Source: Mytilus edulis (lineage: Eukaryota). From it: a stretch of DNA of 64,000 bases. The position numbers were made by a program, and so were the translations under genes. Shown in pieces: positions 9,831 through 36,584 of the stretch. A model generated the notes under the pieces. The model saw only the letters and a list, made by a program, of their open reading frames with translations. It ran no database searches and was not told the origin of the DNA. Every line of letters starts with the position of its first letter. The stretch's first letter is position 1. The stretch is from the NCBI RefSeq assembly GCF_963676685.1, contig NC_092345.1, positions 4,588,001 to 4,652,000 on the forward strand, read 5' to 3'.

Positions 9831-11152
9831 TAAATTTCTTTTCAACTGCACTTATTACATAACATACTTCCACTGTTCCCGCACATACGTGTCAAATTAT
9901 AAAACTAACCACTCCTATAAAACTCGGGCATTAGTTGCTTTGTATTGTTTTATAATACTTTTGTGTTAAAAAGAAAGTAAGATTACAAAACATGACTCAA
10001 GTGGTCGTAATGTGAACGAGAGCAACACGTGATCACACGTGTCATGATAACAGTCAATGACTTTCTATAGAAAAGTCATTAACCTCATTATTAACAAGGG
10101 TTGCAATATTGTTATCTTCGCGTAACCGTCCCGAGTCGTTTTCTAAAAATAACTTTAAAGTAAACAATTGACAATTAAACCAGTAATTATGAAGGAAGTT
10201 AGAAGTGAAATATATATACTATGTATATCTATGGCAATTCGTTTTTTTTATTTTTTTTATTCCATTTTCAATATATTTAAAAAGTACTTGAGATATCTTA
10301 TGAATTAAATATTTTTAAAAGTTATATCAATATCTTAGTAGTTATTTAGGCCTCGGCGGTGTAATGGGAACGCTTAACTGTGATGTTAACGCCGAAGTGC
10401 GATGGTTTTACGCCGAAGTTCGATGGACCTTTCGCTGAAGTGCGATGGCTTGGTATGAAGTTTGAATATTGTGACGTTTTCAGATACAACTTTATTAGAC
10501 AAAATGGATTAGTAGGCAGGATAATTAGTTTATGTATATGAAGGTTTCATGTGTACAAAGGAAAGGAAACAGAGACACACAAACAATTCATATCCCGTAC
10601 ATGCAGTTTTGAGCGTTGGACGTGAAGAATACATAAATAGGTAAAACTAAGTCAGACAGCAAATCATGGGGAACAAAGCGGCTAAAAGATTAGCTCGGCC
10701 TGCATATGGGCTAACCAGTGCTTGGAAGTAAAAAAATGTATGCCGCTGAAATGAATGCTGCTTTGTAAGAAAACCCGCACTGTAAGTCTAATTTGATGTC
10801 CTTATAGTATTAATCTTCTACAACGGGTTAGTCCCGAATGATACCTGCTTGGTGTACTTCTCAATTTCTGCTGCTCAGCGGAGAAACTGCTAATTCTCAA
10901 TAATTTGACAGAACGTGCGTCATATCTCACTAAAAGTAAAACATGTATGTTTATTTCTTACAAACTGTTATGATTCCAGACAAATGGATGAATGAGTGTT
11001 GTAAGCAAATTCTTAGCTATAAGATAACAAGAACAAATTACTAGTATATTTGATAAAAATATAGATGGACCTTGCTAAGTCATTAATATAGACCGCCGTG
11101 CTGAACCCGTTTTTTTTATATATAAAGAAATGTCCATTATAATACTAAATAT

Positions 11153-11372
11153 GAAAAAAAGTAAAATCACAAAAGTACTGAACTCAGAGGAAAATCAAAT
11201 CGGAAAGTCCCTAATCACATGGCAAATTCAAATGACAAAACACATCAAAAACGAATGGACAAGAACTGTCATATTCCTGACTTTGTACAGGCATTTTCAA
11301 ATGTAGAAAATGGTTGATTAAACCTGGTTTTATAGCGCTAAACCTATCACTTTGTACAACAGTCTCGTAATC
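11153..11372 (-). mobile_element. SINE-like family A insertion specific to duplicate copy 1
   Basis: Absent at the corresponding site in copy 2 (~26120-26130). Confidence 0.7.
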
Positions 11373-12420
11373 CAGTGTATTTTCTGACTCCATATTGCTG
11401 TGTGTGCTAACTGAATGATTAACTTAAAAATCAAAGTCTTCGGTTTGGCCTGACCAGAAATTTTTTTTTTTATTTTCTTATTGCAACGCTACCACGCTAA
11501 CCACTTCACCGCCACCTGAGATGGGGTTTTAACTTCAGACCATCGCATTTAGCTATTACATACAACGCACTTCAGTGTAAACAAAATCGGTATTTTTGTT
11601 ATTTTACTTTCATCACAATATTGTGCATTACACTAATACAAAGTTCAGGACTTGGCATTTGGTATAAGCAACAAAAAATATAAATCAAATCTAACCAAAG
11701 TCGAGAGGATGTCTATATTTCCATTCCCCATTCAACCCTTTGAGGATCATAAAAAGTGAAATAACTAAAATACCGAACTCCGTGGAAAATTCAAATGGAA
11801 AGTCCCTAATCACATGGCTAAAATCAAAAGCTAAAACACACCATACGAATGGACAACAACTGTCATATTCTCGACTTGGAACTGTCATTTTCTTATGTAG
11901 AAAATGGTAGATTAAACCTGATTTTATAGCTAGCAAAGGCTCTCACTTGCAAAACAGTCGCATGAAATTCCATTATATTGTTTGAACAAAACAAACAGAC
12001 ATAATAGTTTAAAATGTCAAACATATATAGGGGTTCAGCAGTCAACATAGAAACACAAAAAGGCATAATAGACAAATCACATAAGAAACACAAAAGACAA
12101 AAATACAACAATTTACTACAATGCACATTAGCACGGTGACAGTTAGTTGCTATTTGCGATGAAAATATTCCATGTTCCTTATTTTGAAAATCGTGTTGGT
12201 AGGAACGCCATATTACGTTCAAACTGGAAATAAATGAATTAGCCACCAAGTGCAAATGTTGCTGGAATAACATACATTAGGTATGCTCGAGACCAAAACT
12301 TTATGATAGCACCTTTATGTAGAGCATAAAACAATATAAAAACCTCTAAAGCTAGCTATATAGTTACTAATCATTAATAGAGACAACCTTTGTTTTTAAT
12401 ACAAATAATATACTAGTAAA

Positions 12421-13084
12421 TAGATATAGGAAGATGTGGTGTGAGTGCCAATGAGACAACTCTCCATACAAATAACAATTTAAAAAGTAAACCATTATAG
12501 GTTAAAGTACGGCCTTCAACACGGAGCCTTGGCTCACACCGAACAACAAGCTATAAAGGGCCCTTAAAATTACTAGTGTAAAACCATTCAAACGGGAAAA
12601 CCAACGGTCTAATCTATATAAACAAAACGAGAAACGAGAAACACGTATGTATTACATAAACAAACGACAACTACTGTACATCAGATTCCTGACTTAGGAC
12701 AGGTGCAAACATTTGCAGCGGGATTAAACGTTTTAATGGATCCAAACCTTCTCCCTTTTTCTGAAACAATAGCATAACATCACAACAAAGAAAAACATAC
12801 GATAAAATATCAATTGGCAGACTTAACTCAATCAAAAAACGTATGATTAAACAATGAACGAATAAATTTGATCTGCGATATCCGAATACAAATGCACAGT
12901 TAATTAAATATTAGAGACAAACATTCATGACCAAAAAGCTAACAAACAAATTCAAACACAGGACATGACTGAGAAATATTTAACCAATCAATGTTCACTT
13001 TAGAAAAAAACCGGTTTTTTTATAATCTTGAAGTTTATACAAATGTTGTAAGAATAAGTGAAAAATTGAAGATATTACAAATAA
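12421..13084 (-). mobile_element. SINE-like retroposon, family B, with 7-bp TSD TAGTAAA
   Basis: TAGTAAA at 12414-12420 and 13085-13091. Empty site TACTAGTAAAGACTG in copy 2 at ~28141-28155. A near-identical inverted copy lies at 27252-27708. Confidence 0.85.
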
Positions 13085-13734
13085 TAGTAAAGACTGCTTT
13101 GTATACATTAGAACTGCTTGAGTTACACACTTACAAATTAATTAGTTCTCACAGGGGAATTTGAGAAGCTGTTGGGATATAAAAACTTACTGAGTCCAGC
13201 GTCCTATACTCGCTCTACTGAGTTATGCTTTCGTTGTTCGGACGATACATCACTCGCCGACTTAATCTAGTACATCATGACTAGTGGTATAATGATATCC
13301 CGGCGACTATTGAACAGTAAACCAACAACTGTACCGACCCAGTATTGGTAAAATCAAAGAATTTTGTCGATTTAAATATGTGTATTGTGTGTTTCTTGTA
13401 CAAGATACTAAAGGAATAATTTAAAAACATAAGTCAAAGAAAGACCGCCAACAATAGCATAGCAAAACGAGAAAGACAAAAAAAAGACAAACAGTACTCC
13501 AAATAACAGTTCATAGAAAACTAAAGATTTTGCACGAATTCCAAAATCTAGCGAGGTCTTATGTGCTCTGGAAGGGTTATTATATCCTGTTTTACAAGTG
13601 GCACATGTATTGCTGTATGTGAAGCTTCAGGTTGATCAGGTACGATCACAACAAAAAGTTTGAAAATACAAATTAAAAAATCAAAATCCTTTATTGCAAA
13701 TTTAAACAACAAATCAAATACATTAATTATGATA

Positions 13735-16700
13735 TTAACCAATGTTTTGCCATTTACAGTTGATTCTAGATCTGGGGTCAGACGAATGTCTATTGTCTAT
13801 GTCGGACTCAGTTCTACGTTTGTGTAAAATCTCGCCATTTATAATATCCACTGGAGACAGATCGATATTTGGCGGGACACTGTCATGTGCCAGAACTGTC
13901 GTTAGCCAATCATTGCTGTTCATTCGTCCTGCAGATTGGTTATACAAACGTTCGTGAAAAACGGGCTGTGATGGGATTCTAGAAATGTCTGAAAAGTTAA
14001 ACGGGAATATATTAGTTTTACTGACAAGACATAAGTGTAATTAAGAACAATTAAACAATAAATATTTAAGTTTCAGTTTAATGGTATGCCTGTAATTTTG
14101 ATGGTTGTTTTCTCCTCTCCTTCTCTGCTTTGTAAAACAAGTGATTAGGAATTTTCTTAGTACCATTTAGAGACTACTGAATGGTGAAAAAATTAAGCAA
14201 GTCCGCTCATCATACAATAGTATACAATGAATTCCCGATTTTTTTTTTTATTTTAACGTCATTTTTGAAAGATATTAATCTCAATGGTCACGATGCATAC
14301 TAATCAAATTTAAAACATATCAAATATTTAATAGAGAATCATTAAATAGAAATAAAATTCCTTGCAGAGTACATCATACAGCAGACCAAAAGATCTTCTT
14401 GCATATGTTAAAGACGTCATACTGGTGACTCCCCCAAACTAAAAGAGTCCCAAATCGTCAGAATAAAAATGTTAATATTCACAGTTTTCTGTATAACACT
14501 TTTGTAATAATGAAACTATGTTCTTTCACTTTGAGAATGGAAATGCAAACATGTTTTACTAATGTAAGGATACTACATTTCGACGCTTTGTAGTGTGATG
14601 TGATGTATATATCATATCTACATTTTGGAGCAAAGTATTAAACAAATTATCATTAGAACATTTCAAAGTGAATTACCGTTAAAAGTTTTGTTTCGTGCTA
14701 ATAAATCATGATCTTAATTTTGCATCAAGCTGATAACAGCAGATCGTGCAAGGTTAATTAACATTTTCATACAACAGAAAATGTTTCACTCGTTTTTTTA
14801 ATAACTACGTTATACCTTGTGAAAATCTTCCGTTGTGGACTTCAGGTTCGTCGTAACTGGTTTCCACAGCATGATTATGGGGTGATGACTTTTTGTCCTT
14901 TGCTCTTTTATTTTGGAACCACACTTGTATTACTCTATAGTCTAGACATAAATCTCGGCTCAATCGTCTTCGCGCTTCACGGGTTGGTTTTGGATTTTTG
15001 CTGTAAGCTTTTGTCAAGCATTTTAACTGTTGTGGACTTATGCTGGTTCTGTGTCGTTTACCACTTCCGGTGGAACATTCTGAATCACTATCGTCTTGCG
15101 AATCTACAAAACAAGAAAATTGCAAATTTTATCTTCAATTGCCAGAAACAATAAGTCGACTCCATTTTAAAACTGATAAGTATGGTGATTTCATATCTCA
15201 ATACACGAAATCACCTGACTAAGCCAATATTAAATTAAAAACAAAATGCCATTTGTTGAATATCCTTTGTTTTGGATGTTTGGCCGGAAGTCGCTAACGC
15301 AGACCTCCAATACAATTCAACATAAAACAAAGACATAGAACAGAAACAACAACATGAAACAAAGACAAATGAACAAAAGAAAAAAGAAAACAAACAAAAC
15401 GAAAACAAATTAGTTAACCAATGAAAGATAAATGAAATAAACAAACCGGCATCTCGAGGTCAACATATGATACAGTTTTACATAGAAAGACTTTGGTTTC
15501 TAAATTAGCGAAACTGTTTATAATTTATTAGAATGAACTGTGGGGAAACATGACAAATCAATTATAAATTGAGAGTTGCTTAACTTACCATTCGTCCGTA
15601 AGGCTCGGTAATCATCACCACATACGAGTTTGTTGTCGTCTGAAAGGTAAAACTGTTCCCCTGTCTGTAATGGACGATAGCAGACGACACACTTGAAACA
15701 CGTCTGATGGTAGACGTTTTTCTGAACTCTTTGTACATACTCGTTATCAGACAGAACCAATTTACAGCTAGAACACCGGAACGGGTGTGATCTGTATAAG
15801 AAAAGAAATATCAACATTCAATTCAGAATTAAAAAAAACGGATAAATCATAATACAATAAATTGTATTTTATGATTGTATACTAAAGGTAACTCATTTAA
15901 AGAATAAAATAAAAGCAAAACAAAACAAAACAAAACAAACGATAAGAAAAACAAAATTATGGGATACAAACAAACAAACGTCAGAAGCGCTTTTCTGGGT
16001 TTACTTTCATCATGAAAGCTCAAAACAAATTTAGAATAAAAGGATATATTGTTTCTTGAATGCGTTAGGAGGTTATGACCAAAAGGCACTATTGCTAATT
16101 GTTGAAGACCGTTCCACTGAAATTAACCCCTAAACCTTAGAAAACCAATGCATATGTGTTAAAAGTTAGGGATACTCCACTCGACAATTACGTAACGAAG
16201 ACATTCTTAAATTGCTGATCTTAAAATTCATTTTGGTTTTGCATTTTGTTATTTCAGTTAACTCACCTTATATAATCTTCATAACACAACAAATTACTAC
16301 CGTTTCCATAGCAACTGTTTCCCAATGGTTTTTCACACATAGAACATTGTAAACATGACGGGTGCCACACTTTGTCATGGATACGTAATAATGACTTGTC
16401 GTATATGATGTTACCACATCGAGCACACCCAGGAACACCTAAAGACAAAAATACAATATAAATATGTGTTAGTGTGCAGATTAAGACAATTTGAAAAACC
16501 TGTCATGCAGTTATAAATAATGCTTTTCATTGCTGCACAATGACCGGCTTGTAAAATATGGGGAATTAATAATCAAGTTTCTTTAATGAACTTTTATATT
16601 TGTTTTCCCGTATTTTGTGAAGTAGTTTATACTTCTTCAATATAGATTGATGGTGTGTTTATGTTCACTATTATCATGGATTATGTCGAATTCAAAATAT

Positions 16701-17778
16701 CTTGTATTGTTCTAAAAGGTTACTCTATGTATAGAAATATTGTTAATTTTCTCATCCGACAGTAAAATCCAAGAGCAATTAAATCTATTTTTGGCTGTGT
16801 TGATTGCATTTCAAGTCGGATTACTCGTAATTTAATCAAATGTTTCATGAAGAGAAAGTACCATGTTTTCTGTACGTTGAAAAAAGCGTTGCTTGAAAAA
16901 AAAACTCTTTCATTGGTCCGCACGTTGTCTATAAAAAGTGGGGAATAACAACCACTATCCAGCAACTCGTAAGTCTTATTTGCCTGTCTTTTATCCTGGT
17001 CGGCCTATATTATCGAAATCAAGCCTATCGTATGTATACTGTTAATATATAATTGTTCTCTTCCTGAAGTTGCACGAATCAGTTGCCACTTGACGTTAAG
17101 CAAGAACTTGAACAATTATCAATCTACTTTGGACTTTCCGGTTTGTGTATTACGTTTTTGAATATCTGTTCCTTTTACGTTTTATCAGAAGTCCATTACT
17201 AGGTGGTAATGGACTTCTGGTTTTATCTATATCTTCTTCGTTCAAATATCTACATTTTTCATCATTGAATAATGACAGTTATATTGAATTTGATATATAC
17301 TATTCCTCATCTTTTTGGTAAAAGTTACGAAGTTTAAATAAAAAAAAGTGTAAAAAGAAATTAACAGTGATTCACTGACAGAAAACTAATACCAAACCTT
17401 CTGACGAGCAAAGAAAACAAAACAAAATAAAAAAAATAATTGAAAAAAAAAAACATCTTCCTTATGCGTGTGGATTATATCCGCTGAAAGAAACAGTAAG
17501 AACTTAATGAGAATAGATTTTTAAAAGTCTGAAAATATGTTTGTGTACAGTGAACGATAACACTTTCAAATTCGTTTTTCGCCGATCTTCGTTAAAATAA
17601 AAAAAAAATTAAACGGATGAAAATCAGAGATGGACTGCATTTACACTTGCATTAATATATATATACTTTTTGTTGCGACAGTAATGCTTTTAAAATATTT
17701 GTACATACCGCCTTTCCACGAATCAATATTCTCTGGGTCTGAAGCTGTATCGGACGTGTTCGGAGATGAATATTCCAT
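13735..17778 (-). CDS. LIM-homeobox transcription factor (divergent Lhx3/4-like), copy A, 5 exons, ~328 aa
   Basis: Exons 17709-17778, 16267-16438 (LIM1), 15589-15791 (LIM2), 14816-15103 (homeodomain KRHRTSISPQQL...VIQVWFQNKRAKDKK) and 13735-13988. All introns are GT-AG with consistent phases (1,2,1,1), giving a 987-nt open frame. Confidence 0.88.
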
Positions 17779-18885
17779 TTTATAAAATTTCGACTATTTC
17801 AACCAACTAGCATCAAATAAATGATTGTTTATTACAACTCTTTCAGTAATGATTTGTAAACCTTATATGCCTGTATTTTCAAAGTAGTAAATGTCAATGT
17901 GACTTAGTTAAATAGTTTTGATAATATGAGATGTCTCTGGGATGAGCTACGTTTATAATACCTCAAGTATTTTTATTTGTCTGATTTATCTGAAATCCGA
18001 CTGAGTAATTACAAATTATCTGTCTGGCCTGATAAAAGTCTTGACCAAAACTAGACATAAACAAACGACTCCTTCCGGTGTTTATTCAACAATAACTTCT
18101 GATAATTAGGTTAATTGGTGATAACATGTGGAGGGTCGCGTGTTTCTTTGTTTGTTTGTTTGTTGTGATCACTTGTCCATTGATGTTCTTTGACGGGTCG
18201 ATTACACGTGTTAACGGAAAACAAACAAAGTGATTGGTGTGAGTGATCGATACTATTAGAATGTCTGATCATGTCTGAGCAATACAAATTTATTTTGAGA
18301 CGTGTATTTATTATTATTTTTTTTTAAATTTACTTATTTTATTTTCTCTCGAATATTTATATAGGCTTTAAATTGGTATAATTATTTTGTAATAGAACTC
18401 TTTACTCAATGTAGAAATGCTACTGGAAATGTTAATTAACTTAATCTGTTTATATAACATTCAGTCTATACCATATATATATAACAAAATTATATCTATA
18501 GGCTTTTATACATAAAAAATCATTGTACGTACATAGTAATGTTTCTTGTGAAATCGATAGGTTTTTTTAACTTATAATATTTTTAGATAATCGTCAGATT
18601 GTTGTTATATTTTGGCATATTTTATTATTTTTCGAAATTCTTATCACTCGAAAAGGAATAGATTTCAAATGGATAACATTAGAGAGGTGTGGGGCATGTG
18701 ATTAGTTTTACAGGCCCTAGGGGTACATGTACCATTATTTAAATTCTACTTTTCTTTGTGGTGGTATTTTTTTTAAAATACTCTTAATAACTTTTTTATT
18801 TTATCTATGATGTATAATTATAATACATCCTGTTTTGTGATATTTAAATTTATCTTTATTTGATTTTGTTTCTTCAAAATCCTTA

Positions 18886-19808
18886 TCAGAAAAAGAATAA
18901 ATTATAAAAGCTGTAGAATGGTTTTATGTCATTGGTGCATTCCATAGCATCTGTCCATTCATTATCATATAATTCTCCATACTTTTCACCAATTTTCATT
19001 GGACGATTTGGATCTCCAAGATCGGTAATAGACGGGTTCCCCTTAACTAGTTTTTCTCCAGCAACACTACTTAACCTTGTTTGAAGGTCGTCTTTTTCTG
19101 TTTTTAATTGTGCTATGGTGTCTTCTTTCTCTTTAAGGAGGTAACGGATCTGAGTGGTTTCGACTTCGTTGTGTTGAAGTCTCTTTTGTAGTAGATGTAC
19201 ATAGTGCTGTGAACTTTCAGTACATCCTTTACCTTCCTCTTTCAGATTGAGTCTGTTTTCCTTCCTTTCACTGACTAACTTTTCATAGTTTTCTTGTAAC
19301 TCTCTGAAATCTTTTTTTAAATTAGCAAAGTCGTTTTCTCTTTCTTTGTGAACTTCTTTAAGTCGTTTCTTAAGCCTTTCTTTCTCTTCTCTGTGTTGTA
19401 CTCTAACTTTCTTCAATGTTTCATATAAGAATTGTTCTCTTGGCATGTCAGCAGATTTCGGCTCTTCCCATTTCGATTGCGAATCTTTCACAGAGTTATC
19501 TATTTTCCTCCCTTCCAAACTCATCTTGTTATGTGATTTGTTAATTTCCTCCATCATCCTGACGTTAACTTGGTCATATCACCAGGTGTTTTTTATTACA
19601 CATGTGTAATTCGGTTTCTTTCTGATAGAAGCGCTCTTTCAATTCAATATGTTTTCACTAATGTGGAAATACGATTTGCCGCGATTTTATTTTATTTCTG
19701 TCAAGAAAGTACCATTTTGAATTTTGGCAACATTAAGTCCTTGAGAAACATTGTTAATCTCTTTCATTGTGATATTTTCATAGAATTTATTAATATATGT
19801 AATCCATA
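18886..19808 (-). pseudogene. 3'-truncated duplicate of the MIEAP-like pseudogene
   Basis: ORF 18886-19557 matches 8939-9583 but is cut at the duplication junction (18910/18911) inside the MIEAP domain and ends in FYNLFFF* read from unrelated flank. Confidence 0.8.
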
Positions 19809-22800
19809 AATTTCATTTCAACTGCACTTATTACATAACATACTTCTACAGTTCCTGCAAATACGTGTCAAATTATAAAACTAACCACTCCTATATAACT
19901 CGGCCATAAGTCGCTTTGTATTGTTTTATAATACTTCTGTGTTAAAAAGAAAGTAAGATTTCAAAACATGACTCAAGTCGTCGCAATATGAACGAGAGCA
20001 ACACGTGATCACACGTGTATAACAGTCAATGACTTTCTATAGAAAAGTCATTAACCTCATCATTAACAAGGTTTGCAATATTGGTATCTACGTGTAACCG
20101 TCCCGAGCCGTTTTCTAAAAATAACTTTAAAATAAACAAATGACAATTAAACCAGTAATTATGAAGGAAGTTAGAAGTGAAATATATATATATTATGTAT
20201 ACCTATGGCACTCGAGCTATGGCAATTTAGTTTTTTATTTATTCCATTTTCAATATAATTTAAAAAGTACTTGAGATATCTTATGAATTAAATCGTTTTA
20301 AAAGTTATATCAATAATGAAAGAAAGTGATAAAATAGATCGTACCCCTGTAACAATAAACCAAGATGGCGGTCAGAAAACAAGAAGAGGTAGACCATTAG
20401 GTCAGAAAACAAGAAGAGGTAGACCATTAGGTTCCAAGAACAATTTAAGGAATAATTCGACACCAAGGCCAAGCTCCCCTGCCATTTTAACACAAAATTA
20501 ATTTCAAACACTGCGGGTAGAATAGGAAAATGACGATGCATGGGTATGCGAAAATTGCAAAACAGTGTTTACAAATCCAGACGCAAAAACGTTGGAATGC
20601 CAGAGATGTAAAAAACAATACTGTACCAAATGTCTTAACAAATCAGATGATGAGTACAACATTCTAAGTAAGTCTGACTCGATGTGGTTTTGTAATCCCT
20701 GCAGAGGTAAAGTTGAAAAGAACATTATAACAGATCTAAAAACAGAAGAAAGATGCAACGCAATAATAGAAGAGTTTGAACAAAGGCTACATTTCCTAGA
20801 GACAGAAATCCAGACAAAATGTGATGAAGACACAGTTAGAAAAATAGTACGACAAGAATTAGTCAACAACAACCAGGATGACACAGACACAGCGCCTATA
20901 CTGCCACAAGCCGAAAATAACTCAGTCACATCAGTTATATCAGAACTTAACGAAAGGAAATCAAGAAAAAATAATTTAACCATATACGGAACCAAGGAAT
21001 GTAACTCTGAAAATGTAGAAGAAAGGAAAGACTTCGATTTAGAACTATTGACTGACATTGCACAGAACTGTAAGATAGACCTAAATACATACAACATAGG
21101 TAAGCTAAGAATAATTGGTAAATTTGATAAAGACAAAGTTCATAGACCGTTATTAATTCAAAGTGAAACACCCGATTTTAAAATAGCTGTTTTGAGAAAC
21201 GCGAGTAAGCTAAAGGGAACAGATAAGAAATATTATGCCATATCATTGGGCCACGACATGACAAAATCAGAAAGAGAGAAGGAAAACAAGTTATTTGCGG
21301 AAACCAAGGAAAAAGAAAATAAGAGCCAGGCAAAGTAAGAGGCCCTCCAGGTACTCGACGAATAATAAGGGTGCAATAAAAACTAAAAACATAAGAAAAA
21401 GAAATTGTACAAATGTAGATAAAGATGTAAATATGTTTCATGTTCTTAACAGTTTGAGTTGTTTTTATACGAACGCCGACCAATTTAGAAATAAGTTTGC
21501 AGAATTCCAAACTAGAATTAATACTTATCGTCCAATGATAATTGGTATTACTAAAGTTAAACCTAAAAACAGTGCTTATAAATTGAACCCGGCAGAGTTT
21601 AATTTAGATTTAATAGACAATTATGATCTTTTTTTCAATTAACATTGATAGTGACAAAGGAAGAGGTATGATATTTACATGTACACAAAACACTAGGAGC
21701 GAAAGAAGTAAATATGGAAATAAACTATGAAGAAAATATATTTGTGAAAATTGCACTAAATAAAAATGACGCTCTTTTACTGGGACTACTATATAGGTCA
21801 CCGTCAGAAACTACTGCTCTCAGCAACAATAATTCAAATATTTAAATTTAATTACTGAGTCAATTCAAAAGAATTTCTCACATATAGTATTATTTGGAGA
21901 TATGAATTACCCTAATGTTGACTGGGAAACACATAACTGTAAGAGTGATAACATAGAGTGGGATGAATATAAATTTACACAGTGTGTTCAAGACAATTAC
22001 TTGTACCAGCATGTAACAAAACCAACCAGATGGAAGGGACCAGACACACAACATGTATTAGACCTCATATTCGCGAACGAAGAAAATATGGTAAGCGATA
22101 TTGAGTACCTAAGTCCACTGGGGAAAAGTGATCACTGTGTGATACAATTTCAATATAACTGTTACACAAAATTGAAAATTGACAATAGAACAAAAATGCT
22201 ACGATAGAGGTAACTATGCAGTTTTAACAAAGAAATATTGGAGACAAATTGGGAAGTGCTTTTAAACCAAGGTGATCACATAGATAAAAATTGGGAAAAA
22301 TTTCATGAAAAATTATCAGAGATGGAGAAGCGTTATATCCCTGTCAAGAGAATAAAAACCTCAACTAAAAGAAGGAGTGATTTTTAAATGGACAAAAAAA
22401 ATTTAGAGAAAATAAAAAAATAAAAACTCTCTATGTAGGAAGTCAATTGCTACTAAAGATCCAAGTATAAGATTGGATTACAATAAAGTACGTTATCAAG
22501 TAAAGACGATGACAAATAAACTAAAAAGGGAACATGAAAAGAAACTGTCAACAAATGCTAAGAAAAATCCAAAAGCAATAAGGAAATACATAAAGTCCAA
22601 GTATAAAACAAGATCAGGAATAGGTGAACTATTAATAGACCAAAACGACAATACGTCTAGAAAGACCGATGACGACAAAGATTATGCTGAAATTTTAGCA
22701 ACGTTTTTCAACAGTGTCTTCACAAAAGAACCAGAAGGAGAAGGTACCTACCTTACCAATAAAAAACACTGAAAATAAAATGCTACAAATAAACTTACCA

Positions 22801-22820
22801 GGAATAAAATTTAATATATA

Positions 22821-22862
22821 CGCAAGACACGCGTTTCGTCTACAAAAGACTCATCAGTGACG
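22821..22862 (-). ncRNA. Minimal type I hammerhead ribozyme (slightly degenerate copy)
   Basis: Minus strand reads CGTCA-CTGATGA-GTCT TTTGT AGAC-GAAA-C GCGT GTC^TTGCG, with one stem I mismatch and a non-palindromic loop III. Confidence 0.75.
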
Positions 22863-23185
22863 TTCGAATCAAAAATGTTATAAAAGGCCAAATAAAGTAC
22901 GAAGTTGAAGAGATTTGAGGACCAAAAATTCCTAAAGGTTTTGCCAAATACAACTAAGGTAATCTATTCCTGAGGTAGAAAAGCCTTAGTTTTTCCAAAA
23001 TTCAAAGTTTTGTCAACAGTTAATTTATAATTATAAACATATCAATGGTAACTCAAGTCAACACAGAAGTGCTGACTACTGGGCTGGTGATACCCTCGGG
23101 GAAATAAATCTCACCAGCAGTGGCATCGACCCAGTGATTGCAAATAAACTCATCATAGATACCAGGAATAAAATTTTAATATTTA

Positions 23186-23227
23186 CGCCAGACGCGCGTT
23201 TCGTCTACAAAAGACTCATCAGTGACG
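23186..23227 (-). ncRNA. Minimal type I hammerhead ribozyme (intact copy)
   Basis: Minus strand reads CGTCA-CTGATGA-GTCT TTTGT AGAC-GAAA-C GCGC GTC^TGGCG. It has the full core, a 4-bp stem II, stem I CGUCA/UGGCG, a palindromic loop III and a GUC cleavage triplet. Confidence 0.88.
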
Positions 23228-24286
23228 CTCGAATCAAAAATGTTATAAAAGGCCAAATAAAGTACGAAGTTGAAGAGATTTGAGGACAAAAAATTCCTAA
23301 AAGTTTTGCCAAATACAGCTAAGGTAATCTATTCCTGAGGTAGAAAAGCCTTAAAATGAATATAAATAAGGAAGAAATAGCTAAGATACTTGAGGGACTG
23401 AAGGTTGAAAAATCTCCGGGACCAGATAGGATACACCCAAGAATACTCATAGAGTCAGCAGAAACAATATCAACACCATTATGCATAATATTCAACCAAT
23501 CAATAACAAACAGTACTGTTCCAAGTAGATGGAAAGAAGCACAAATTAGCGCTATTTTAAAGAAAGGAAAAAATGTATTGCTGGTAACTATAGACCTGTC
23601 AGTCTAACCTCAGTGGTGTGCAAAGTAATGGAAAAATTGGTACGTGAACATATTGTCAAACATATGAAAAGCAACAAATTCTTTACTGATCGTCAATATG
23701 GATTTATATCAGGCAGATCTACATCTCTTCAACTTTTAAATGTTTTGGACAAATGGCTAGAAGCCCTCGGTAATGGGAAATCTATCGATGTTATTTACAT
23801 GGACTATATGAAAGCATTCGACACTGTTCCGCACAAAAGACTAATGAACAAACTCAGAGCATATGGCACAGAACTTTCAGTTCTGAATTGGGTCGATAGT
23901 TTTCTAAGTGACAGGATATAACACGTTTCAATAAACAATAGAACATCATCATGGTCAAAAGTAACTTCAGGTATACCCCATGGCCAAGGATCTATGCTTG
24001 GGCCTCTACTTTCTGTGATTTTCATAAATGACCTACCAAACATGGTTGATTCCGACGTATACCTCTTTGCAGATGATACTAAAATTTTTAACACAATTAG
24101 TTAGAAAGAGGATAAAACTCAATTACAAAGTGACTTAAATAAACTATCGCTATGGAGTGATACCTGGCTATTAAAGTTTCACCTCGACAAGTGCAAACAT
24201 ATGCACATAGGTAAACCGGAATCAGACTCAAAATAAACACTGAAATCGACAATAATACAAAAAGTTACTGAGGAAAAAGACATTGG

Positions 24287-24604
24287 TATAGGGGGCGGGT
24301 TGAGATCTCATAAACATGTTTAACTCTTCCGCAATTTTGCGCCTGTCCCAAGTCAGGAGCCTCTGGCTTTTGTTAGTCTTGTATGATTTTTTATTTTAGT
24401 TTCTTGCGTATAATTCGGAGTTTAGTATGACGTCCATTATCAGTGTACTAGTATACATATTTTTTAAGGGGCCAGCTGAAGGACGCCTACGGGTACGGGA
24501 GTTTCTCGCTACATTGAAGACACATTGGTGGCCTTCGGCTGTTGTCTGCTCTATGGTCGGGTTGTTGTCGCTTTGACACATTCCCCATTTCCTTTCTCAA
24601 TTTT
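24287..24604 (+). mobile_element. SINE-like element (core CCTGTCCCAAGTCAGG) nested in LINE ORF2
   Basis: 5-bp TSD ATTGG at 24282-24286 and 24605-24609. Removal restores E-K-D-I-G-V-I-I. Confidence 0.8.
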
Positions 24605-26486
24605 ATTGGAGTAATTATTGACACTCTGAATTAAATTTCGAAAAACATATAAGTGAGAAAGTTAATAAAGCAAATTCCGTGTCTGCACTACTGAGAAGGA
24701 CTTTCTAATATTTAGATACAGATACCTTTGTACTACTATACAAGACACTCGTAAGAACACATTTAGAGTTTGCAAGCTCAATATGGCATCCATATAAAAT
24801 AAAATATATTGACATGATTGAGAATATACAGCGCCGGGCAACTAAACAACTACCAGGATTAAAGAATTTAACTTACTCAGAAAGACTGCGAAAATTAAAA
24901 CTACCATCTCTAAATTTCAGACGGGTCCGAGGTGACATGATTGAATTATATAAAATACTGGACGGAAAATATGATAAAGAGGCGGCACAATTTGTTAAAT
25001 TATGGAAGGATATGACTACAAGAACAGGGGTACGCGGCAACAGTCTGAAAATATTTCCACAGAGAGCAAGAACAGAATTAAGGAGAAATGTTTTTGCTCT
25101 ATGAGTGGTGAGACCATGGAATACACTACCCGAAATTATAGTGACATCACCAACCACAAATACATTTAAGAATAGACTAGGCAAATACTGGATGAACCAA
25201 GCAATGGTGTACGAAGACTATAAATCAACAATCACCGGAAGTGGAGAAGATTTAGATATAGAGATTGATGAAGAGGAGCTTTAGTTCCTGTGTCAGTAAA
25301 AGAACCTAAGTAAATATCTTAGTAGCTATTTAGGCCTCGGAAGTTCGATGGGAACGCTGAAGTGCGATGTCTACGCCGAAGTGCGATGGTCTTTCGCTGA
25401 AGTGCGTTGGCATGGTATAAATTTTGGATATTGGGACATTTCAAATATAACGTTATACGGATTCGTATGCAAGATAATTAGTTTATGTATATGCAGATGT
25501 CATGCGTACGAAGGAAAGTAAACGGAAAGACACAAACAATTCAAGTCCCGAACATGCAGTTTTGAGCGTTGGACGTATAGATTAAAGAAATAGGTAAAAG
25601 TAAGTCAGATAGCAAATAATGGGGAACAAAGCGGCTATACGATTATCTAAGTCTTTATATGGGCTAACCATTGTTTGAAAGTAAACAATGTATGCCGCTA
25701 AGATGAATCCTGCTTTGTAAGAAAACCCGCACTCTCTGTTTAATTTGTTTGTCCTTATAGTATTAATCTTCTGCAACCGGTTAGACCCGAATGATACCTA
25801 CTTGGTGTAATTCTCAATTTCTGCTGCTCAGCGGAGAAGCTACTAATTCTCAAAATTTTGACAGAAAATGCGTCATATCTCACTAAAAGTAAAACATGTA
25901 TGTTTATTTCTTAAAAACTGTTATGATACCAGACAAATGGATGAATGAGTGTTGTACGCAAATTCTTAGCAATAAGATGACAAGAACAAGTTACTTGTAT
26001 AGTTGATAAAAATATAGATGGACCTTGCTAAGTCAATAATATAGACCGCCGTGCTGAACCCGTTTCTTAATCGCACTTAAACATTCAATATAAAGACATG
26101 TCCATTATAATACTTAATATAACCCAACTAGTGTATTTTCTGACTCCATACTGCTGTATGTGCTAACCAAATGATTAACTGAAAAATCAATGTATTTGGT
26201 TTGGCCTGACCAAAAAAACATTATTAATGCAAGGCTACCACGCCAACCACTACACAGCCCCATGAGATGGGGTTCTATTTTTAGACCATCGCATTTAGCT
26301 ATTATAAACAACGCACTTTATCGTTAAAAAAAATCGGTATTTTTGTTATTTTACTTTTAACACAGTTTTGTGCGAATTTCAAACGCGCAATTTTACACCA
26401 GTACTCAAAACCCTCCTTCCTTTATGGGTGCATTTTACATAGACAAATAAAATCGTATAATATAATCAAAATGAGGATGTTAATAT

Positions 26487-26857
26487 GATGTATGCCTTTT
26501 TGTGCTTCTTTGTTACATTTGTTGTTTTTATGGTGATTAAGATGATAACACAATGTTGACTGCTGTACCCCTATTTTTGACATTTTTACCTATTGTGTCT
26601 GTTTGTTTTGTTCACGCATCGGTGACAATATAATGGAATTTGATGCGACTGTCATACAAGTGAGAGGTTTAGCTAGCTATAAAACCAGGTTCAATCCACC
26701 ATGTTCTACATTTGAAAATGGCTGTACCAAGTCAGGAATATGACAGTTCTTGTCCATTCGTTTTTGATGCGTTTTGTTATTTGATTTTGCCATGTGATTA
26801 TGGACTTTCCGAATTGATTTTCCCTCGAGTTCAGTATTTTTGTGATTTTACTTTTCC
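26487..26857 (+). mobile_element. SINE-like family A copy
   Basis: Reverse complement of the 7088 and 11153 copies; lies in a ~520-bp segment absent from copy 1. Confidence 0.7.
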
Positions 26858-27251
26858 CTTATTCAAAGTTAACAAGACACTATATTATTACGATGTTTTC
26901 AGGACTTGGAATTTAATATAAGCAACAAAAATATAAATAAAATCTAACCAAAGTCGAATGGATGTTTATACTTTTATATCCCATTCAACACTTTGAAGAT
27001 CATAAAAAGTGAAATAACTAAAATCCGAACTCCTAGAAAAATTCAAAACGGAAAGTCTCTCATTAAAATGGAAAAATTAAAAGCTCAAACACACCAAACG
27101 AATGGACAACTGTCATATTCCTGACTTGGAACCGTCATTTTATTATGTGGAAAATTGTGGATTAAACTTGGTTTTATAGCTAGCAAAAGCTCTCACTTGT
27201 AAAACAGTCTCATATCCAATACATTGCTTGGATAAAACAAACAGACATAAT

Positions 27252-27708
27252 CGCAGATCAAATTTATTCGTTCATTGTTTAATCATACGTTTTTTGATTG
27301 AGTTAAGTCTGCCAATTGATATTTTATCGTATGTTTTTCTTTGTTGTGATGTTATGCTATTGTTTCAGAAAAAGGGAGAAGGTTTGGATCCATTAAAACG
27401 TTTAATCCCGCTGCAAATGATTGCACCTGTCCTAAGTCAGGAATCTGATGTACAGTAGTTGTCGTTGGTTTGTGTAATTTATACGTGTTTCTCGTTTCTC
27501 GTTTTGTTTATATAGATTAGACCGTTGGTTTTCCCGTTTGAATGGTTTTACACTAGTAATTTTGGGGCCCTTTATAGCTTGTTGTTCGGTGTGAGCCAAG
27601 GCTCCGTGTTGAAGGCCGTACTTTAACCTATAATGGTTTACTTTTTAAATTGTTATTTGTATGGAGAGTTGTCTCATTGGCACTCACACCACATCTTCCT
27701 ATATCTAT
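27252..27708 (+). mobile_element. SINE-like family B, one-end-truncated copy with 5-bp TSD ATAAT
   Basis: ATAAT at 27247-27251 and 27709-27713. Empty site CAGACATAATAGTTT at ~11996-12010. Near-identical to 12421-12880 in reverse. Confidence 0.85.
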
Positions 27709-28791
27709 ATAATAGTTTGAATGTCAAAAATAGGGGTACAGCAGTCAACGTTGTGTTATAATCTTAATCACTGTAAAATAAAATTAAAAATATGTCAACA
27801 AAGATACACAAAAAGGCATAATAGACAAACAACATTAGCAAACACGAAAGACAATAATACAACAATTTACTATAGCACATTAGCAAAATGACAGTTAGTT
27901 TGCTATTTGCGATGAAAATATTCCATGTTCCTTATTTTAAAAATCGTGTAGGTAGGTTCAAACTGGAAATAAACGATTTAGCTACCACGTGCTAATGATT
28001 CTGGAATAACATACGTTAGGTATGCTCGAGACCAAAAATTTGTGATAGCATGTTTATGATGAGCATAAAACAATATAAAAATCCTTCTAAAGCCAGCTCT
28101 GGTTACCTAGAGACAACCTTTGTGTTTAATACAAATAATATACTAGTAAAGACTGCTTTGTATATATTAGAACTGCATGAGTTACGCACTTTCATTACGT
28201 TCTCACGGGGGAATTTGGGAAGCTGTATGGACATAACAACTTGTTGAGTCCATTGTCGCTCTACTGAGTTATGCTTTCGTTTTTCTGACGATGTCTTAAT
28301 CGCCGACTTTACCTATAGTACATCATGACTAGTGGTATAATGATATCCCAGCGACTATTGAACAGTACAACAACAGCTGTACTGACCCAGTATTGGTTAA
28401 ATTAAAGAGTTTTATCTATTTACATGCGCGTGTTATGTGCTTCCTGTACAAGATACTAAAGGAATAATTCAAAACCATGTACAAGTCAAAGAAAAAACCG
28501 CCAGCAATAACATATCAAAAACAAAAATAAATAAAGACAAACAAGACTCCAAATAACAGTTCATTGAAAACTAAAGATTTAGCAACACAAAGATTAAATC
28601 CTCTGTGATCTCATGTGTTCCGGAAGGGAAAACATATCCTGTTCCACAACTGTCACATACCATGCTTTATGTGAAGAATCACGTTTATCATGTCCGCTCA
28701 TATCACAACAAAAAGTGCGGAAAGAAACGACTACAAAATCAAAATCAAAATCTTTTATTGCAAATTTACACAAGTGAAATAAATTATGGTA

Positions 28792-31700
28792 TCAACCAAT
28801 GTTTTGCCATTTGCAGTTGATTCTAGATCTGGGGTCAGACGAATGTCTATTGTCTATGTCAGACTCAGTTCTACGTTTGTGTAAAATCTCGCCATTTATA
28901 ATATCCACGGGAGACAGATCGATATTTGGAGGGACACTGTCATGCGCCAGAACTGTCGTTAGCCAATCGTTGCTGTTTATTCGTCCTGCAGATTGGTTAT
29001 ACAAACGTTCGTGAATAACTGGCTGCGATGGGATTCTAGAAACATCTGAAGAGTCAAACAAGAAACATGTTAGTTTTATTGACAAGACACTTTTACAATT
29101 ATTGTCATACTAGTACTACATTTTGAAGCTTTGTTTTGTGATGTATATCCTACTACATTTGGGATCAAGGCATTAAACAAATCATCATTAAAGATTTTCA
29201 AATGAAAAGTCTTGTTTCATGCTCAGCAATCAAGATCTCTATTTTGCATCAAGCTTATGATTTTGAAAGGTTAAACATTTTCATATATTATAACAGAAAA
29301 TGTTTCACTCGTTATTTTAATATCTACGTTATACCTTGTGAAAATCTTCCGTTGTGGACTTCAGGTTCGTCGTAACTGGTTTCCACAGCATGATTATGAG
29401 GTGATGACTTTTTGTCCTTTGCTCTTTTATTTTGGAACCACACTTGTATTACTCTATAGTCTAGACATAAATCTCGGCTCAATCGTCTGCGCGCTTCACG
29501 GGTTGGTTTTGGATTTTTGCTGTAAGCTTTTGTCAAGCAGTTTAACTGTTGTGGACTAATGCTGGTTCTGTGTCGTTTACCACTTCCGGTGGAACATTCT
29601 GAGTCACTATCGTCTTGCGAATCTGAAAACAAGAAAATTGCAAATTGTATTGTCAATAGCCAGAAACAATAAGTCAACTCCATTTTAAAGCTGATGAGTA
29701 TATATATATAATTTCATCATATCTCAATGCACGAAATCACCTGACTAAGCCAATATTAAATTAAAAACAAAATGCCATTAGTTGAATATCCTTTGTTTTG
29801 CATGTTTGGCCGGAAGTCGCTAACGCAGACCTCCAATACATATCAACATAAAACAAAGACATAGAACAGAAACAACAACATGAAACAAAGACAAATGAAC
29901 AGAAGAAAAAATAAAACAAACAAAACGAAAACAAATTAGTTAGCCAATGAAGGATAAATGAAATAAACAAACCGGCATCTCGAGGTCAACATACGATACA
30001 GTTTTACATAGAAAGACTTTGGTTTCTGAAATAAGGAAACTGTTTATAATTTATTAGAATGAACTGTGGGGAAAAATGACAAGTCAACTATAAATTAAGA
30101 GTTGCTTAACTTACCATTCGTCCGCAAGGCTCTGTAATCATCACCACATACGAGTTTGTTGTCGTCTGAAAGGTAAAACTGTTCTCCCGTCTGTAATGGA
30201 CGATAGCAGACGACACACTTGAAACACGTCTGATGATAGACGTTTTTCTGAACTCTTTGTACATACTCGTTATCAGACAGAACCAATTTACAGCTAGAAC
30301 ACCGGAACGGGTGTGATCTGTATAAGAAAAGAAATATCAGGTTAAACGGGACATTCAATTCAGAATTAAAAAAACGGATAAATCATAATACAATAAATTG
30401 TATTCTATGATTGTATACTAAAGGTAACTCATATAAAGAATAAAATAAAAGCAAAACAAAACAAACAATAAGAAAAACAAAACTATGGGATACAAACAAA
30501 CAAACGTCAGAAGCTCTTTTCTGGGTTTACTTTCATCATGAACGCTCAAAACAAATTTAGAATAAAAGGATACATTGAATGCGTGAGGATGTTATGACCA
30601 AAAGGCACTATTGCTAATTGTTGAAGACCGTTCGACTGAAGTTAACCCCTAACCCTTAGAAAACCAATGCATATGTGTTAAAAGTTAGGGATACTCCACT
30701 CGACAATTACGTAACGAAGACATTCTAAAATTGCTGATCTTAAAATTCATTTTGATTTTGCATTTTGTTATTTCAGTTAACTCACCTTATATAATCTTCA
30801 TAACACAACAAATTACTACCGTTACCATAGCAACTGTTTCCTAATGGTTTTTCACACATAGAACATTGTAAACATGACGGGTGCCACACTTTGTCATGGA
30901 TACGTAATAATGACTTGTCGTATATGATGTTACCACATCGAGCACACCCAGGAACACCTAAAGACAAAAATACAATGTAAATATGTGTTAGTGTGCAGAT
31001 TGAGACAATTTGAAAAACCTGTCATGCAGTTATAAGTAATGCTTTTCATTGCTGCACAATGACCGGCTTGTAAAATATGGGGAATTAATAATCAAGTTTC
31101 TTTAATGAACTTTTATATTTGTTTTCCCGTATTTTGTGAAGTAGTTTATACTTCTTCAATATAGATTGATGGTGTGTTTATGTTCACTATTATTATGGAT
31201 TATGTCGAATTCAAAATATCTTGTATTGTTCTAAAAGGTTGCTCTATGTATATAAATATTGTTAATTTTCTCATCCGGCAGTAAAATCCAAGAGCAATTA
31301 AATCTGTTTTGGCTGTGTTGATTGCATTACAAGTCGGATTACTCGTATTTTAATCAAATGTTTCATGAAGAGAAAGTACCACGCTTTCTGAACGTTGAAG
31401 GAAGCGTTGCTTGAAAAAACTCTTTCATTGGTCCTCACGTTGTCTATAAAAAGTGGGGAATAACTACCACTATCCAGCAACTCGTAAGTCTTATTTGCCT
31501 GTCTTTTATCCTGGTCGGCCTATATTATCGAAATCAAGCCTATCGTATGTATACTGTTAATATATAACTGTTCTCTTCCTGAAGGTGCACGAATCAGTTG
31601 CCACTTGACGTTAAAGGGAAATCACACTATTTATACTACTAATAATAAATCATTGAAATTTTGCATGTAGACAGATCATACTTATTACAATATTTTAGGC

Positions 31701-35948: not shown

Positions 35949-36584
35949 TTTATAAAATTTCGACTATTTCAACCAACTAGCATCAAATAAATGATTGTTT
36001 ATTACAATTCTTTCAGTAATGATTTGTAAACCTTATATGCCTGTATTTTCAAAGTAATAAATGTCAATGTGACTTAGTTAAATAGTTTTGATAATATGAG
36101 ATGTCTCTGGGATGAGCTACGTTTATAATACCTCAAGTATTTTTATTTGTCTGATTTATCTGAAATCCGACTGAATAATTACAAATTATCTGTCTGGCCT
36201 GATAAAAGTCTTGACCAAAACTAGACATAAACAAACGACTCCTTCCGGTGTTTATTCAACAATAACTTCTGATAATTAGGTTAATTGGTGATAACATGTG
36301 GAGGGTCGCGTGTTTCTTTGTTTGTATGTTTGTTGTGATCACTTGTCCATTGATGTTCTTTGACGGGTCGATTACACGTGTTAACGGAAAACAAACAAAG
36401 TGATTGGTGTGAGTTATCGATACTATTAGAATTTCTGATCATGTCTGAGCAATACAAATATATTTTGAGACGTATATTTATTATTACTTTTTTTTAACTG
36501 TACTTATTTACTAACAACAAACCTTAGTTGTCTTAATTTGTTTGTGTTTTTTTTTTCCTCTCGAATATTTATATAGGCTTTAAT

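What the first reader, a model, noticed from the sequence alone, without database searches (positions are those of the whole stretch)
22791..23353. Hammerhead-ribozyme retrozyme inside a LINE; predicted 365-nt self-cleaving (circular) RNA
Seen: two 42-nt minus-strand motifs lie exactly 365 nt apart. Each has the hammerhead core CUGAUGA-stem II-GAAA-stem III-GUC and a closing stem I (CGUCA/UGGCG). They sit in a 1.5-unit direct repeat that interrupts LINE ORF2 and is flanked by an AAAT TSD. Known: minimal type I hammerheads with a tiny palindromic stem III (AC-GCGC-GU) cleave as dimers and define Penelope-associated and non-LTR retrozymes, which yield small circular RNAs in several animals including mussels. 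Inference: minus-strand transcription would release a monomer spanning 23190 to 22826. The TSD and a datable insertion context (inside a LINE that itself post-dates the segmental duplication) show a discrete, relatively recent retrozyme mobilisation. No ORF track reveals this.
Basis: partly seen in the sequence, partly recalled or inferred. Interest (0 to 1): 0.85.

Follow-up and report, generated by a model that had tools for sequence, protein, structure and literature searches.

The report
Decaying copy of known mussel retrozyme
This is a real but ordinary, partly decayed genomic copy of the hammerhead-ribozyme "retrozyme" repeat already cloned and shown to make small circular RNAs in Mytilus mussels; it sits inside a dead LINE, and nothing shows that this copy itself is still transcribed.

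Summary
Two type I hammerhead motifs lie on the minus strand (23185-23228 and 22820-22863), exactly 365 nt apart, in a 563-bp, 1.5-unit element (22791-23353). Other copies of the host LINE give the empty site, so this was one discrete insertion flanked by AAAT. The LINE is absent from the older tandem-duplicate copy.

It is not new. The upstream hammerhead matches, 47 of 47 bases, the Mytilus galloprovincialis clone Mg353 of Cervera and de la Pena 2020. That paper reports about 5000 copies, single-motif self-cleavage at about 0.1 per min, and abundant circRNA on northern blots. This genome gave at least 6731 first-look candidates for the unit. The scan has noted this family many times on other DNA of this genome.

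Points to correct:
- The downstream hammerhead has three substitutions, one of them a C.U mismatch in helix I.
- The repeated parts differ at 8 of 183 positions, so the insertion is not young.
- RNA reads cover the element but not its flanks, and they carry family-consensus letters at this copy's private sites. That shows family expression, not expression of this locus.
- The 3'-side AAAT could equally be the element's own end (microhomology).

One small addition: sampled copies share a 3' end about 50 nt past the cleavage site and have variable 5' starts.

The parts
22787..22790 (.). AAAT on the left (+ strand), next to the element's sense-strand 3' end. It is either a target-site duplication or microhomology.
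   Evidence: Empty sites in L032, L033, L037, L041, L034 and L035 carry AAAT once. The family consensus 3' end also reads ...GAGTTTATTTG, so these four bases could belong to the element.
22791..22825 (-). 35-nt 3' tail. It corresponds to unit positions 1-45, with a 9-nt internal deletion and a 1-nt indel.
   Evidence: (families D3, D7).
22820..22863 (-). Downstream type I hammerhead. The core is intact, but there are 3 substitutions against the family consensus: a C.U mismatch in helix I, loop III GCGC to GCGU, and G to A in the 5' strand of helix I.
   Evidence: Rfam 27.3 bits. 3 mismatches to the published motif. Energy of the canonical structure -3.4 against -6.7 kcal/mol for the upstream motif.
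22826..23190 (-). Full 365-nt unit lying between the two predicted GUC cleavage sites.
   Evidence: GC 35.9%. No ORF of 60 aa or more inside it.
23185..23228 (-). Upstream type I hammerhead, identical to the family consensus and to the published Mg353 motif.
   Evidence: Rfam 32.5 bits. 47 of 47 match to the motif printed in the paper's supplement. Top score with model R1.
23191..23353 (-). 5'-truncated partial unit (unit positions 203-365).
23354..23357 (.). AAAT on the right (+ strand), next to the element's sense-strand 5' end. It derives from the target.
   Evidence: The unit consensus upstream of position 203 reads differently, so this AAAT is not element sequence.
20316..25312 (+). Host LINE, about 5 kb including the retrozyme. 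It is degraded (fragmented frames) and absent from the older duplicate copy at 10329-10332. Its flanks share about 3 bp (ATA).

Best explanation
The feature is one ordinary genomic copy of the Mytilus non-LTR retrozyme family, the family of the published clone Mg353.

Anatomy, on the minus strand, sense 5' to 3':
- a 5'-truncated partial unit (unit positions 203-365);
- one full 365-nt unit;
- a 35-nt 3' tail ending in the AU-rich stretch ...AGUUU(AUUU).

Inferred history. A retrozyme RNA that was continuous across the ribozyme cleavage site, meaning a circle or an uncleaved multimer, was reverse-transcribed at a nick in the + strand after ...CAAAT. The primer probably annealed to the AUUU of the RNA. 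Copying went more than once round and stopped part-way through the second unit.

Shown directly. The insertion was discrete. It landed antisense in the endonuclease-to-RT linker of a LINE that had itself inserted after a local tandem duplication.

Later decay. The downstream hammerhead has lost a helix I base pair and two other consensus letters, and the 3' tail carries a 9-nt deletion. The upstream hammerhead is still identical to the motif shown at the bench to self-cleave.

Function. At family level, transcripts self-cleave at GUC and are ligated into circles of about 350-390 nt (published). For this copy there is no evidence of transcription, and I consider it most likely a silent fossil.
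For: Family identity:
- 47 of 47 identity of the upstream hammerhead to the Mg353 construct, and 1 mismatch in each of two body segments of 47 and 41 nt.
- At least 6731 first-look candidates for the unit in the same 1.37-Gb genome, which has 14 large contigs. Scored copies are 86-94% identical.
- The paper reports about 5000 hammerheads in repeats of 350-390 bp, kobs about 0.1 per min, and circRNA on northern blots.

Discrete insertion: empty sites in six LINE relatives.

Hammerhead fold across 72 distinct copies: 92.3% of cells paired, 6 of 12 pairs with changes on both sides, and 0 of 500 shuffles reaching the observed score.

Termini in 22 other elements: 3' ends at unit positions 44-59 (one at 37 beside an internal duplication) and scattered 5' starts.

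Decay and silence:
- 3 substitutions in the downstream motif and a weaker canonical fold.
- RNA depth is zero on both LINE flanks in 2 raw RNA runs.
- 81% of laid reads in the raw run X21 (82% in X24) are only 90-95% alike.
- At 22824, one of this copy's private sites, 21 of 23 and 18 of 18 reads carry the consensus letter.
Against: - Both hammerheads score under Rfam's gathering score.
- The isolated motifs do not take the canonical three-way junction as their minimum-energy fold, and the monomer's fold is not unusual (z -1.07).
- Among close copies the hammerhead is no better conserved than the rest of the unit. Support for the fold therefore comes mainly from one second hammerhead family.
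- Silence of this locus is an absence of evidence from 2 raw RNA runs read only in part (about 6% and 18% of each).
- A circular template is inferred, not shown. Local duplication or unequal crossing-over after insertion could also produce 1.5 units.
- A crude target-duplication survey of 22 other copies gave no signal above shuffled pairing.
Confidence: 0.88

Rival explanations
1. The locus is an active source. Minus-strand transcription is cut by both hammerheads, and the 365-nt product (23190-22826) is ligated into a circle.
For: The upstream hammerhead is identical to a motif shown to cleave. The downstream motif keeps every core nucleotide and 5 of 6 helix I pairs. A few reads are 99% or more alike (29 and 27 in the raw runs).
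Against: Read depth is zero on both flanks. Reads over the downstream motif carry G where this copy has U (22824), and in part C where it has U (22829). The element is antisense to the LINE, so LINE transcription would yield the inactive complement. The canonical fold of the downstream motif is at least 3.3 kcal/mol weaker. The reads that are 99% alike may come from stretches that are identical in other copies.
Confidence: 0.1
2. The 1.5-unit arrangement arose in place. A single partial unit was inserted and later duplicated locally by slippage or unequal exchange, as in satellite DNA, rather than by multi-round reverse transcription.
For: Units within arrays elsewhere are only 90-99% alike (mean 94.4%), against 91.4% between arrays. 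The family forms long arrays, as the paper and other scan notes report. 7 of the 8 differences between the two parts are private to the downstream part.
Against: The same architecture recurs at many independent loci: a partial unit of variable length, then whole units, then a common 3' end near unit position 50. That points to the shape of the insertion event. Here the whole 563 bp is missing from the empty sites.
Confidence: 0.1
3. The hammerhead-like motifs are chance matches in a plain repeat with no ribozyme function.
For: Rfam scores fall below the gathering score. The minimum-energy folds are not canonical.
Against: Exact identity to a published self-cleaving motif. Compensatory changes in all three helices between two hammerhead families. 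0 of 100 shuffles match. The block shared between otherwise unlike expressed families is 23184-23249, which is the hammerhead plus about 20 nt (loose ends).
Confidence: 0.01

Closest known systems
Mytilus galloprovincialis non-LTR retrozyme (clone Mg353, hammerhead family HHR A; Cervera and de la Pena, Nucleic Acids Res 2020, PMC7229834)
   Same: Identical 47-nt hammerhead. The body is near-identical in the two segments tested (1 mismatch each). Unit length 365 nt falls within the reported 350-390 nt. GC is low (36%), the arrangement is tandem, copy number is in the thousands, and family RNA is present in mussel RNA-seq.
   Different: Nothing categorical. This copy is a 1.5-mer with a degraded second hammerhead, a 9-nt deletion in its tail, and no sign of its own transcription.
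Penelope-like elements (PLEs) and their pseudo-LTRs with hammerheads (Cervera and de la Pena 2014; Craig et al. 2021, PMC8557442; Li et al. 2026 preprint, 10.64898/2026.07.22.740005)
   Same: Insertions are partial tandems in which a 5'-truncated upstream copy precedes a full copy. The hammerhead lies near the 3' end. There is no poly(A). PLEs are abundant in this genome (at least 858 GIY-YIG candidates). In one PLE family here (L045/L046) the hammerhead sits 159 nt from the end of homology.
   Different: The retrozyme has no ORF. Its hammerhead (helix II GUCU/AGAC, loop III GCGC) differs from the PLE hammerheads seen here. No sequence was shared with the 30 PLE loci examined, other than inserted retrozyme copies.
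Newt satellite 2 and axolotl HHR_Amex1 repeats, and the Schistosoma Sm-alpha hammerhead repeats
   Same: Type I hammerhead in a dispersed or tandem repeat of about 300-350 nt that is transcribed into monomeric RNAs.
   Different: Per the paper, the amphibian motifs have a 1-bp helix III and cleave well only as dimers. The mussel motif has 2 bp plus a tetraloop and is reported to cleave as a single motif.
Plant LTR retrozymes (type III hammerheads)
   Same: Non-autonomous retroelements whose hammerheads release an RNA that can circularise.
   Different: They have LTRs, a PBS and a PPT, 4-bp target duplications, high GC, units of about 700 nt, and depend on Gypsy elements. None of this applies here.

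Membership tests
Hammerhead ribozyme type I (Rfam RF00163) | Conserved catalytic core: CUGANGA, GAAA, and a UH cleavage site | tested here: met
   Both motifs carry CUGAUGA, GAAA and GUC.
Hammerhead ribozyme type I (Rfam RF00163) | Three helices around the core with helix I open; pairing supported by covariation | tested here: met
   92.3% of cells paired across 72 distinct copies. 6 of 12 pairs show changes on both sides. Slid controls give 18-46% paired. The alignment was fitted to the model, and the covariation comes mostly from one second family. The downstream motif has one C.U mismatch in helix I.
Hammerhead ribozyme type I (Rfam RF00163) | Score at or above the curated gathering score (34 bits) | tested here: not met
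   32.5 and 27.3 bits. Other copies in this genome reach 34-42 bits. The short helix III and the odd loops lower the score; the motif is nevertheless identical to one shown to cleave.
Hammerhead ribozyme type I (Rfam RF00163) | Self-cleavage at the predicted site | not testable with these tools
   Reported for the identical motif in clone Mg353 (kobs about 0.1 per min, PMC7229834). Not tested for this copy's downstream variant.
Metazoan non-LTR retrozyme (Cervera and de la Pena 2020) | Type I hammerhead inside short tandem repeats (150-450 bp) of low GC | tested here: met
   365-nt unit, 1.5 units here and up to 5 or more elsewhere, GC 36%.
Metazoan non-LTR retrozyme (Cervera and de la Pena 2020) | Non-coding, with no LTR, PBS or PPT | tested here: met
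   No ORF of 60 aa or more inside 22791-23353. The only direct repeat is the unit itself. PBS and PPT were not searched for specifically.
Metazoan non-LTR retrozyme (Cervera and de la Pena 2020) | Dispersed, many copies, inserted as discrete units | tested here: met
   At least 6731 first-look candidates on all large contigs. Empty site shown for this copy.
Metazoan non-LTR retrozyme (Cervera and de la Pena 2020) | Expressed as monomer-length circular RNA | tested here: inconclusive
   Family RNA is present in 4 RNA data sets and reads run across the cleavage site. Short reads cannot tell a circle from a multimer, and no locus-specific reads were seen. Circularity is published for the family.
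Metazoan non-LTR retrozyme (Cervera and de la Pena 2020) | Sequence identity to the cloned Mytilus element | tested here: met
   0 of 47, 1 of 47 and 1 of 41 mismatches in three segments.

The most novel reading that the evidence does not exclude
The termini of this family say how it moves. In the 23 elements examined, the 3' boundary falls within the AU-rich stretch GAGUUUAUUUG, about 44-59 nt past the ribozyme cleavage site and never at the site itself. The 5' start is scattered along the unit. The sequence is continuous across the cleavage site. At the one junction with a known empty site, 4-5 nt are shared between target and element.

This would mean target-primed reverse transcription that starts by microhomology at one defined spot on a circular or uncleaved template and runs round it a variable distance. 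That is not copying of the linear cleaved monomer. The text of the 2020 paper proposes tandem cDNA made from circles but does not mention a fixed 3' end or 5' truncation. A fixed 3' end would also give a handle for finding the autonomous partner by matching 3' ends.
Probability: 0.45. Interest if true: 0.45.

Novelty: already known. Interest (0 to 1): 0.2.

Why it matters
As a single locus it matters little. It is one of thousands of copies of a published, bench-tested element, and probably a dead one. Its use is as a clean worked example. The empty site is known, so both junctions can be read to the base, and the nesting (duplication, then LINE, then retrozyme) gives a relative order of events. 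The family-wide pattern of ends seen along the way, a common 3' boundary about 50 nt past the cleavage site with variable 5' starts, is a testable clue to how these elements are copied back into DNA and which autonomous element serves them. The published papers I read leave that question open for invertebrates.

Tried and rejected
1. Autonomous partner. I fetched 30 GIY-YIG (Penelope-like) loci and compared them with the unit by blastn and by an nhmmer profile. Only inserted retrozyme copies matched (L053, L074). The 1.5-kb flanks would not reach the 3' ends of Naiad-type elements, whose endonuclease is N-terminal.

2. ORFs next to retrozyme copies (L007, L022, L023): no reverse transcriptase domain.

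3. Hammerhead-specific conservation among 36 close units: the profile is flat at about 3-5% divergence everywhere, so it is uninformative.

4. Target-duplication survey of 22 other copies without empty sites: the longest shared string is no longer than with shuffled pairing (4.45 against 4.40).

5. Thermodynamic folding. The monomer has z -1.07. The isolated hammerheads do not take the canonical junction as their minimum-energy fold. I do not count this as evidence against the ribozyme, because such energy models handle short helix III hammerheads poorly.

6. Gathering-threshold Rfam scan of the whole window: no match.

7. Reads. They could show neither circularity nor locus-specific expression, and there was no pile-up of read ends at the cleavage site. 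Both first-mate directions are covered about equally, so the transcribed strand could not be read off.

8. The host LINE's own 3' end (...CCTAAGTAA) does not resemble the retrozyme's 3' end.
Full report
**What is in the sequence**

On the minus strand, Rfam's type I hammerhead model (RF00163) matches 23185-23228 at 32.5 bits (E 3.1e-5) and 22820-22863 at 27.3 bits (E 0.0017). Both matches are full length and exactly 365 nt apart. Both fall just under the curated cut-off of 34 bits, so a gathering-threshold scan of the whole window reports nothing.

Both motifs carry the full core: CUGAUGA, GAAA and GUC. Helix II has 4 bp (GUCU/AGAC). Helix III has 2 bp closed by a tetraloop. They sit in a direct repeat, 22806-22988 against 23171-23353, at 96% identity and spacing 365.

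**Context**

The flanks belong to a degraded LINE on the + strand. An endonuclease match (Exo_endo_phos_2) lies at 21902-22207 and an RVT_1 match at 23613-23921. The LINE's frames are fragmented.

Searching the genome with the left flank returned related LINE copies. Six of them read straight through the insertion point as ...GCTACAAAT|GAATAT.... In one of them, L032, an open frame spans the point.

The window therefore carries a discrete 563-bp insert at 22791-23353, with AAAT at 22787-22790 and again at 23354-23357.

The LINE (about 20316-25312) is itself an insertion. The window holds a tandem duplication in which 8938-10332 pairs with 18910-20315 (94.2%) and 10329-11152 pairs with 25313-26120. 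The roughly 5 kb in between exists only in the second copy, and its flanks share about 3 bp.

**What it is**

The genome is 1.37 Gb with 14 large contigs. It gave at least 6731 first-look candidates for the 365-nt unit, and scored copies on all large contigs are 86-94% identical.

Cervera and de la Pena (2020, PMC7229834) described exactly this in Mytilus galloprovincialis:
- about 5000 type I hammerheads in repeats of 350-390 bp;
- a cloned genomic repeat that self-cleaves co-transcriptionally at about 0.1 per min;
- northern blots showing abundant circular RNA in gonad and mantle.

Their supplement prints the clone Mg353. Its 47-nt hammerhead matches the window's upstream motif 47 of 47, and the downstream motif with 3 mismatches. 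Two body segments of 47 and 41 nt match with one mismatch each. The element is a member of that published family. I did not determine the species beyond this match.

**Does the ribozyme fold hold up across copies?**

I built a covariance model from 12 motifs and searched 66 held sources. It found 89 motifs, 72 of them distinct. Only two lie in the window.

On the resulting alignment:
- 92.3% of cells form standard pairs, against 18-46% when partners are slid;
- 6 of 12 pairs show changes on both sides;
- no shuffle out of 500 reaches the observed covariation score.

The compensatory changes come mainly from a second hammerhead family (for example L016:322-369, L073:184-231 and L053:2206-2253). 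In that family helix II reads GACA/UGUC, the inner pair of helix III is U-A, and helix I has A-U for G-C. This fits the paper's statement that there are two related hammerhead families.

Among close copies of the window's own family the hammerhead is no better conserved than the rest of the unit. That comparison says nothing either way.

**State of this copy**

Against the consensus of 36 sampled units the element is 96% identical. The two repeated parts differ at 8 of 183 positions, and 7 of those differences are private to the downstream part.

Three of them fall in the downstream hammerhead:
- G to A in the 5' strand of helix I;
- C to U in loop III;
- G to U in the 3' strand of helix I, which breaks the second base pair next to the cleavage site.

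The energy of the canonical structure is -6.7 kcal/mol for the upstream motif and -3.4 kcal/mol for the downstream one. The 3' tail also lacks 9 nt that the element's own full unit has.

Units within other arrays are 90-99% alike, against a mean of 91.4% between arrays. By that measure this copy is of ordinary age for the family, not young.

**RNA evidence**

I laid two raw RNA-seq runs, one PacBio transcript set and one further RNA assembly on 22400-23800, accepting reads at 90% likeness or more.

- Depth is confined to the element and is zero on both LINE flanks.
- 81% of laid reads in the raw run X21 (82% in X24) are only 90-95% alike, and 92% continue into unlike sequence.
- At 22824, a private site of the downstream hammerhead, 21 of 23 and 18 of 18 reads in the two raw runs carry the consensus letter. 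At 22829 a large share do.
- Loose ends cluster at 23184 and at 23239-23249. The block shared between otherwise different expressed families is therefore the hammerhead plus about 20 nt.
- There is no pile-up of read ends at the cleavage site. Reads cross it, which fits circles or uncleaved multimers equally.

In short, the family is expressed, and this copy is not shown to be. Because the element is antisense to the LINE, transcription of the LINE would give the inactive complement.

**How it probably got there**

In 22 other elements from the fetched loci the sense-strand 3' end falls at unit positions 44-59, within ...GAUGAGUUUAUUUG. One ends at position 37 beside an internal duplication. 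The 5' start is scattered (positions 1-7, 36, 126, 158, 165, 175, 209-217, 236-279, 316-340), and units number from about one to more than five.

The window's copy fits this pattern: start at 203, end at 45-50.

A common 3' end with variable 5' truncation is the mark of target-primed reverse transcription. That the 3' end is not the cleavage site, and that the sequence runs on across the site, argues against the linear cleaved monomer as template. It favours a circle or an uncleaved multimer.

At this locus the + strand reads ...CAAAT followed directly by cDNA of the element. The element's consensus continues AUUUG exactly where the target reads ATTTG. So the 3'-side AAAT may be microhomology used for priming rather than a duplicated target.

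A crude survey of 22 other copies found no target duplication above chance. The paper states only that target duplications, when present, are longer than 4 bp. This mechanism is inference.

The partial-tandem layout with a hammerhead near the 3' end mirrors Penelope-like elements (PMC8557442). These are abundant here (at least 858 GIY-YIG candidates). A 2026 preprint argues that vertebrate retrozymes derive from Penelope pseudo-LTRs and leaves invertebrates untested.

I could not name the partner. None of the 30 Penelope-like loci I fetched shares sequence with the unit, other than inserted retrozyme copies.

The published construct with the identical motif holds one hammerhead and is reported to cleave. 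The paper contrasts the invertebrate 2-bp helix III with the weaker, dimer-dependent amphibian type. Dimer formation through the palindromic GCGC loop remains possible, but it is not required by what is published.

'Recent' is true only relative to the LINE and the duplication.

**Verdict**

This copy is half-decayed and probably silent. Earlier notes of this scan describe the same family at many other places in this genome. One of them independently noted a common 3' boundary, which my measurements support.

Noticed in passing
L016:322-369, L073:184-231, L053:2206-2253: A second hammerhead family with compensatory changes in all three helices (helix II GACA/UGUC, inner pair of helix III U-A, helix I A-U). 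It probably corresponds to one of the paper's two Mytilus hammerhead families.
   Followed up: partly
L053:816-912, L005:2513-2652, L015:229-362: Very short retrozyme insertions of about 100-140 nt, made of just the hammerhead plus the 50-nt 3' tail (unit positions about 279/316-365 plus 1-49). These are extreme 5' truncations that keep the common 3' end.
   Followed up: partly
L045:2600-2791 and L046:2599-2791: A Penelope-like family with a long ORF and a GIY-YIG domain carries a minimal hammerhead with a palindromic helix III (ACAUGU). Homology between the two copies ends 159 nt past the cleavage site, so the hammerhead lies near the element's 3' end.
   Followed up: partly
window 8938-18910 and 18910-38497: A tandem segmental duplication with an original period of about 9.97 kb and 83-98% identity in blocks. 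The second copy is enlarged by the 5-kb LINE and by further insertions near 31614-35269 and 36509-37957. Short segments are inverted between the copies (12412-12879 against 27250-27716).
   Followed up: partly
window 53588-54800 and 58139-59357: Two blocks of tandem repeats with periods of about 135-160 nt, about 4.4 kb apart. Copies are 61-94% alike.
   Followed up: no
window 20565-21338 (+): The first long frame of the host LINE gives a weak PHD-finger-like match (21.7 bits, under the cut-off). It may be a zinc-finger ORF1.
   Followed up: no
window 23184-23249: In RNA-seq, hundreds of reads match only this block (the hammerhead plus about 20 nt upstream) and then continue into unlike sequence on both sides. 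Several expressed retrozyme families appear to share the ribozyme module but not the body.
   Followed up: partly
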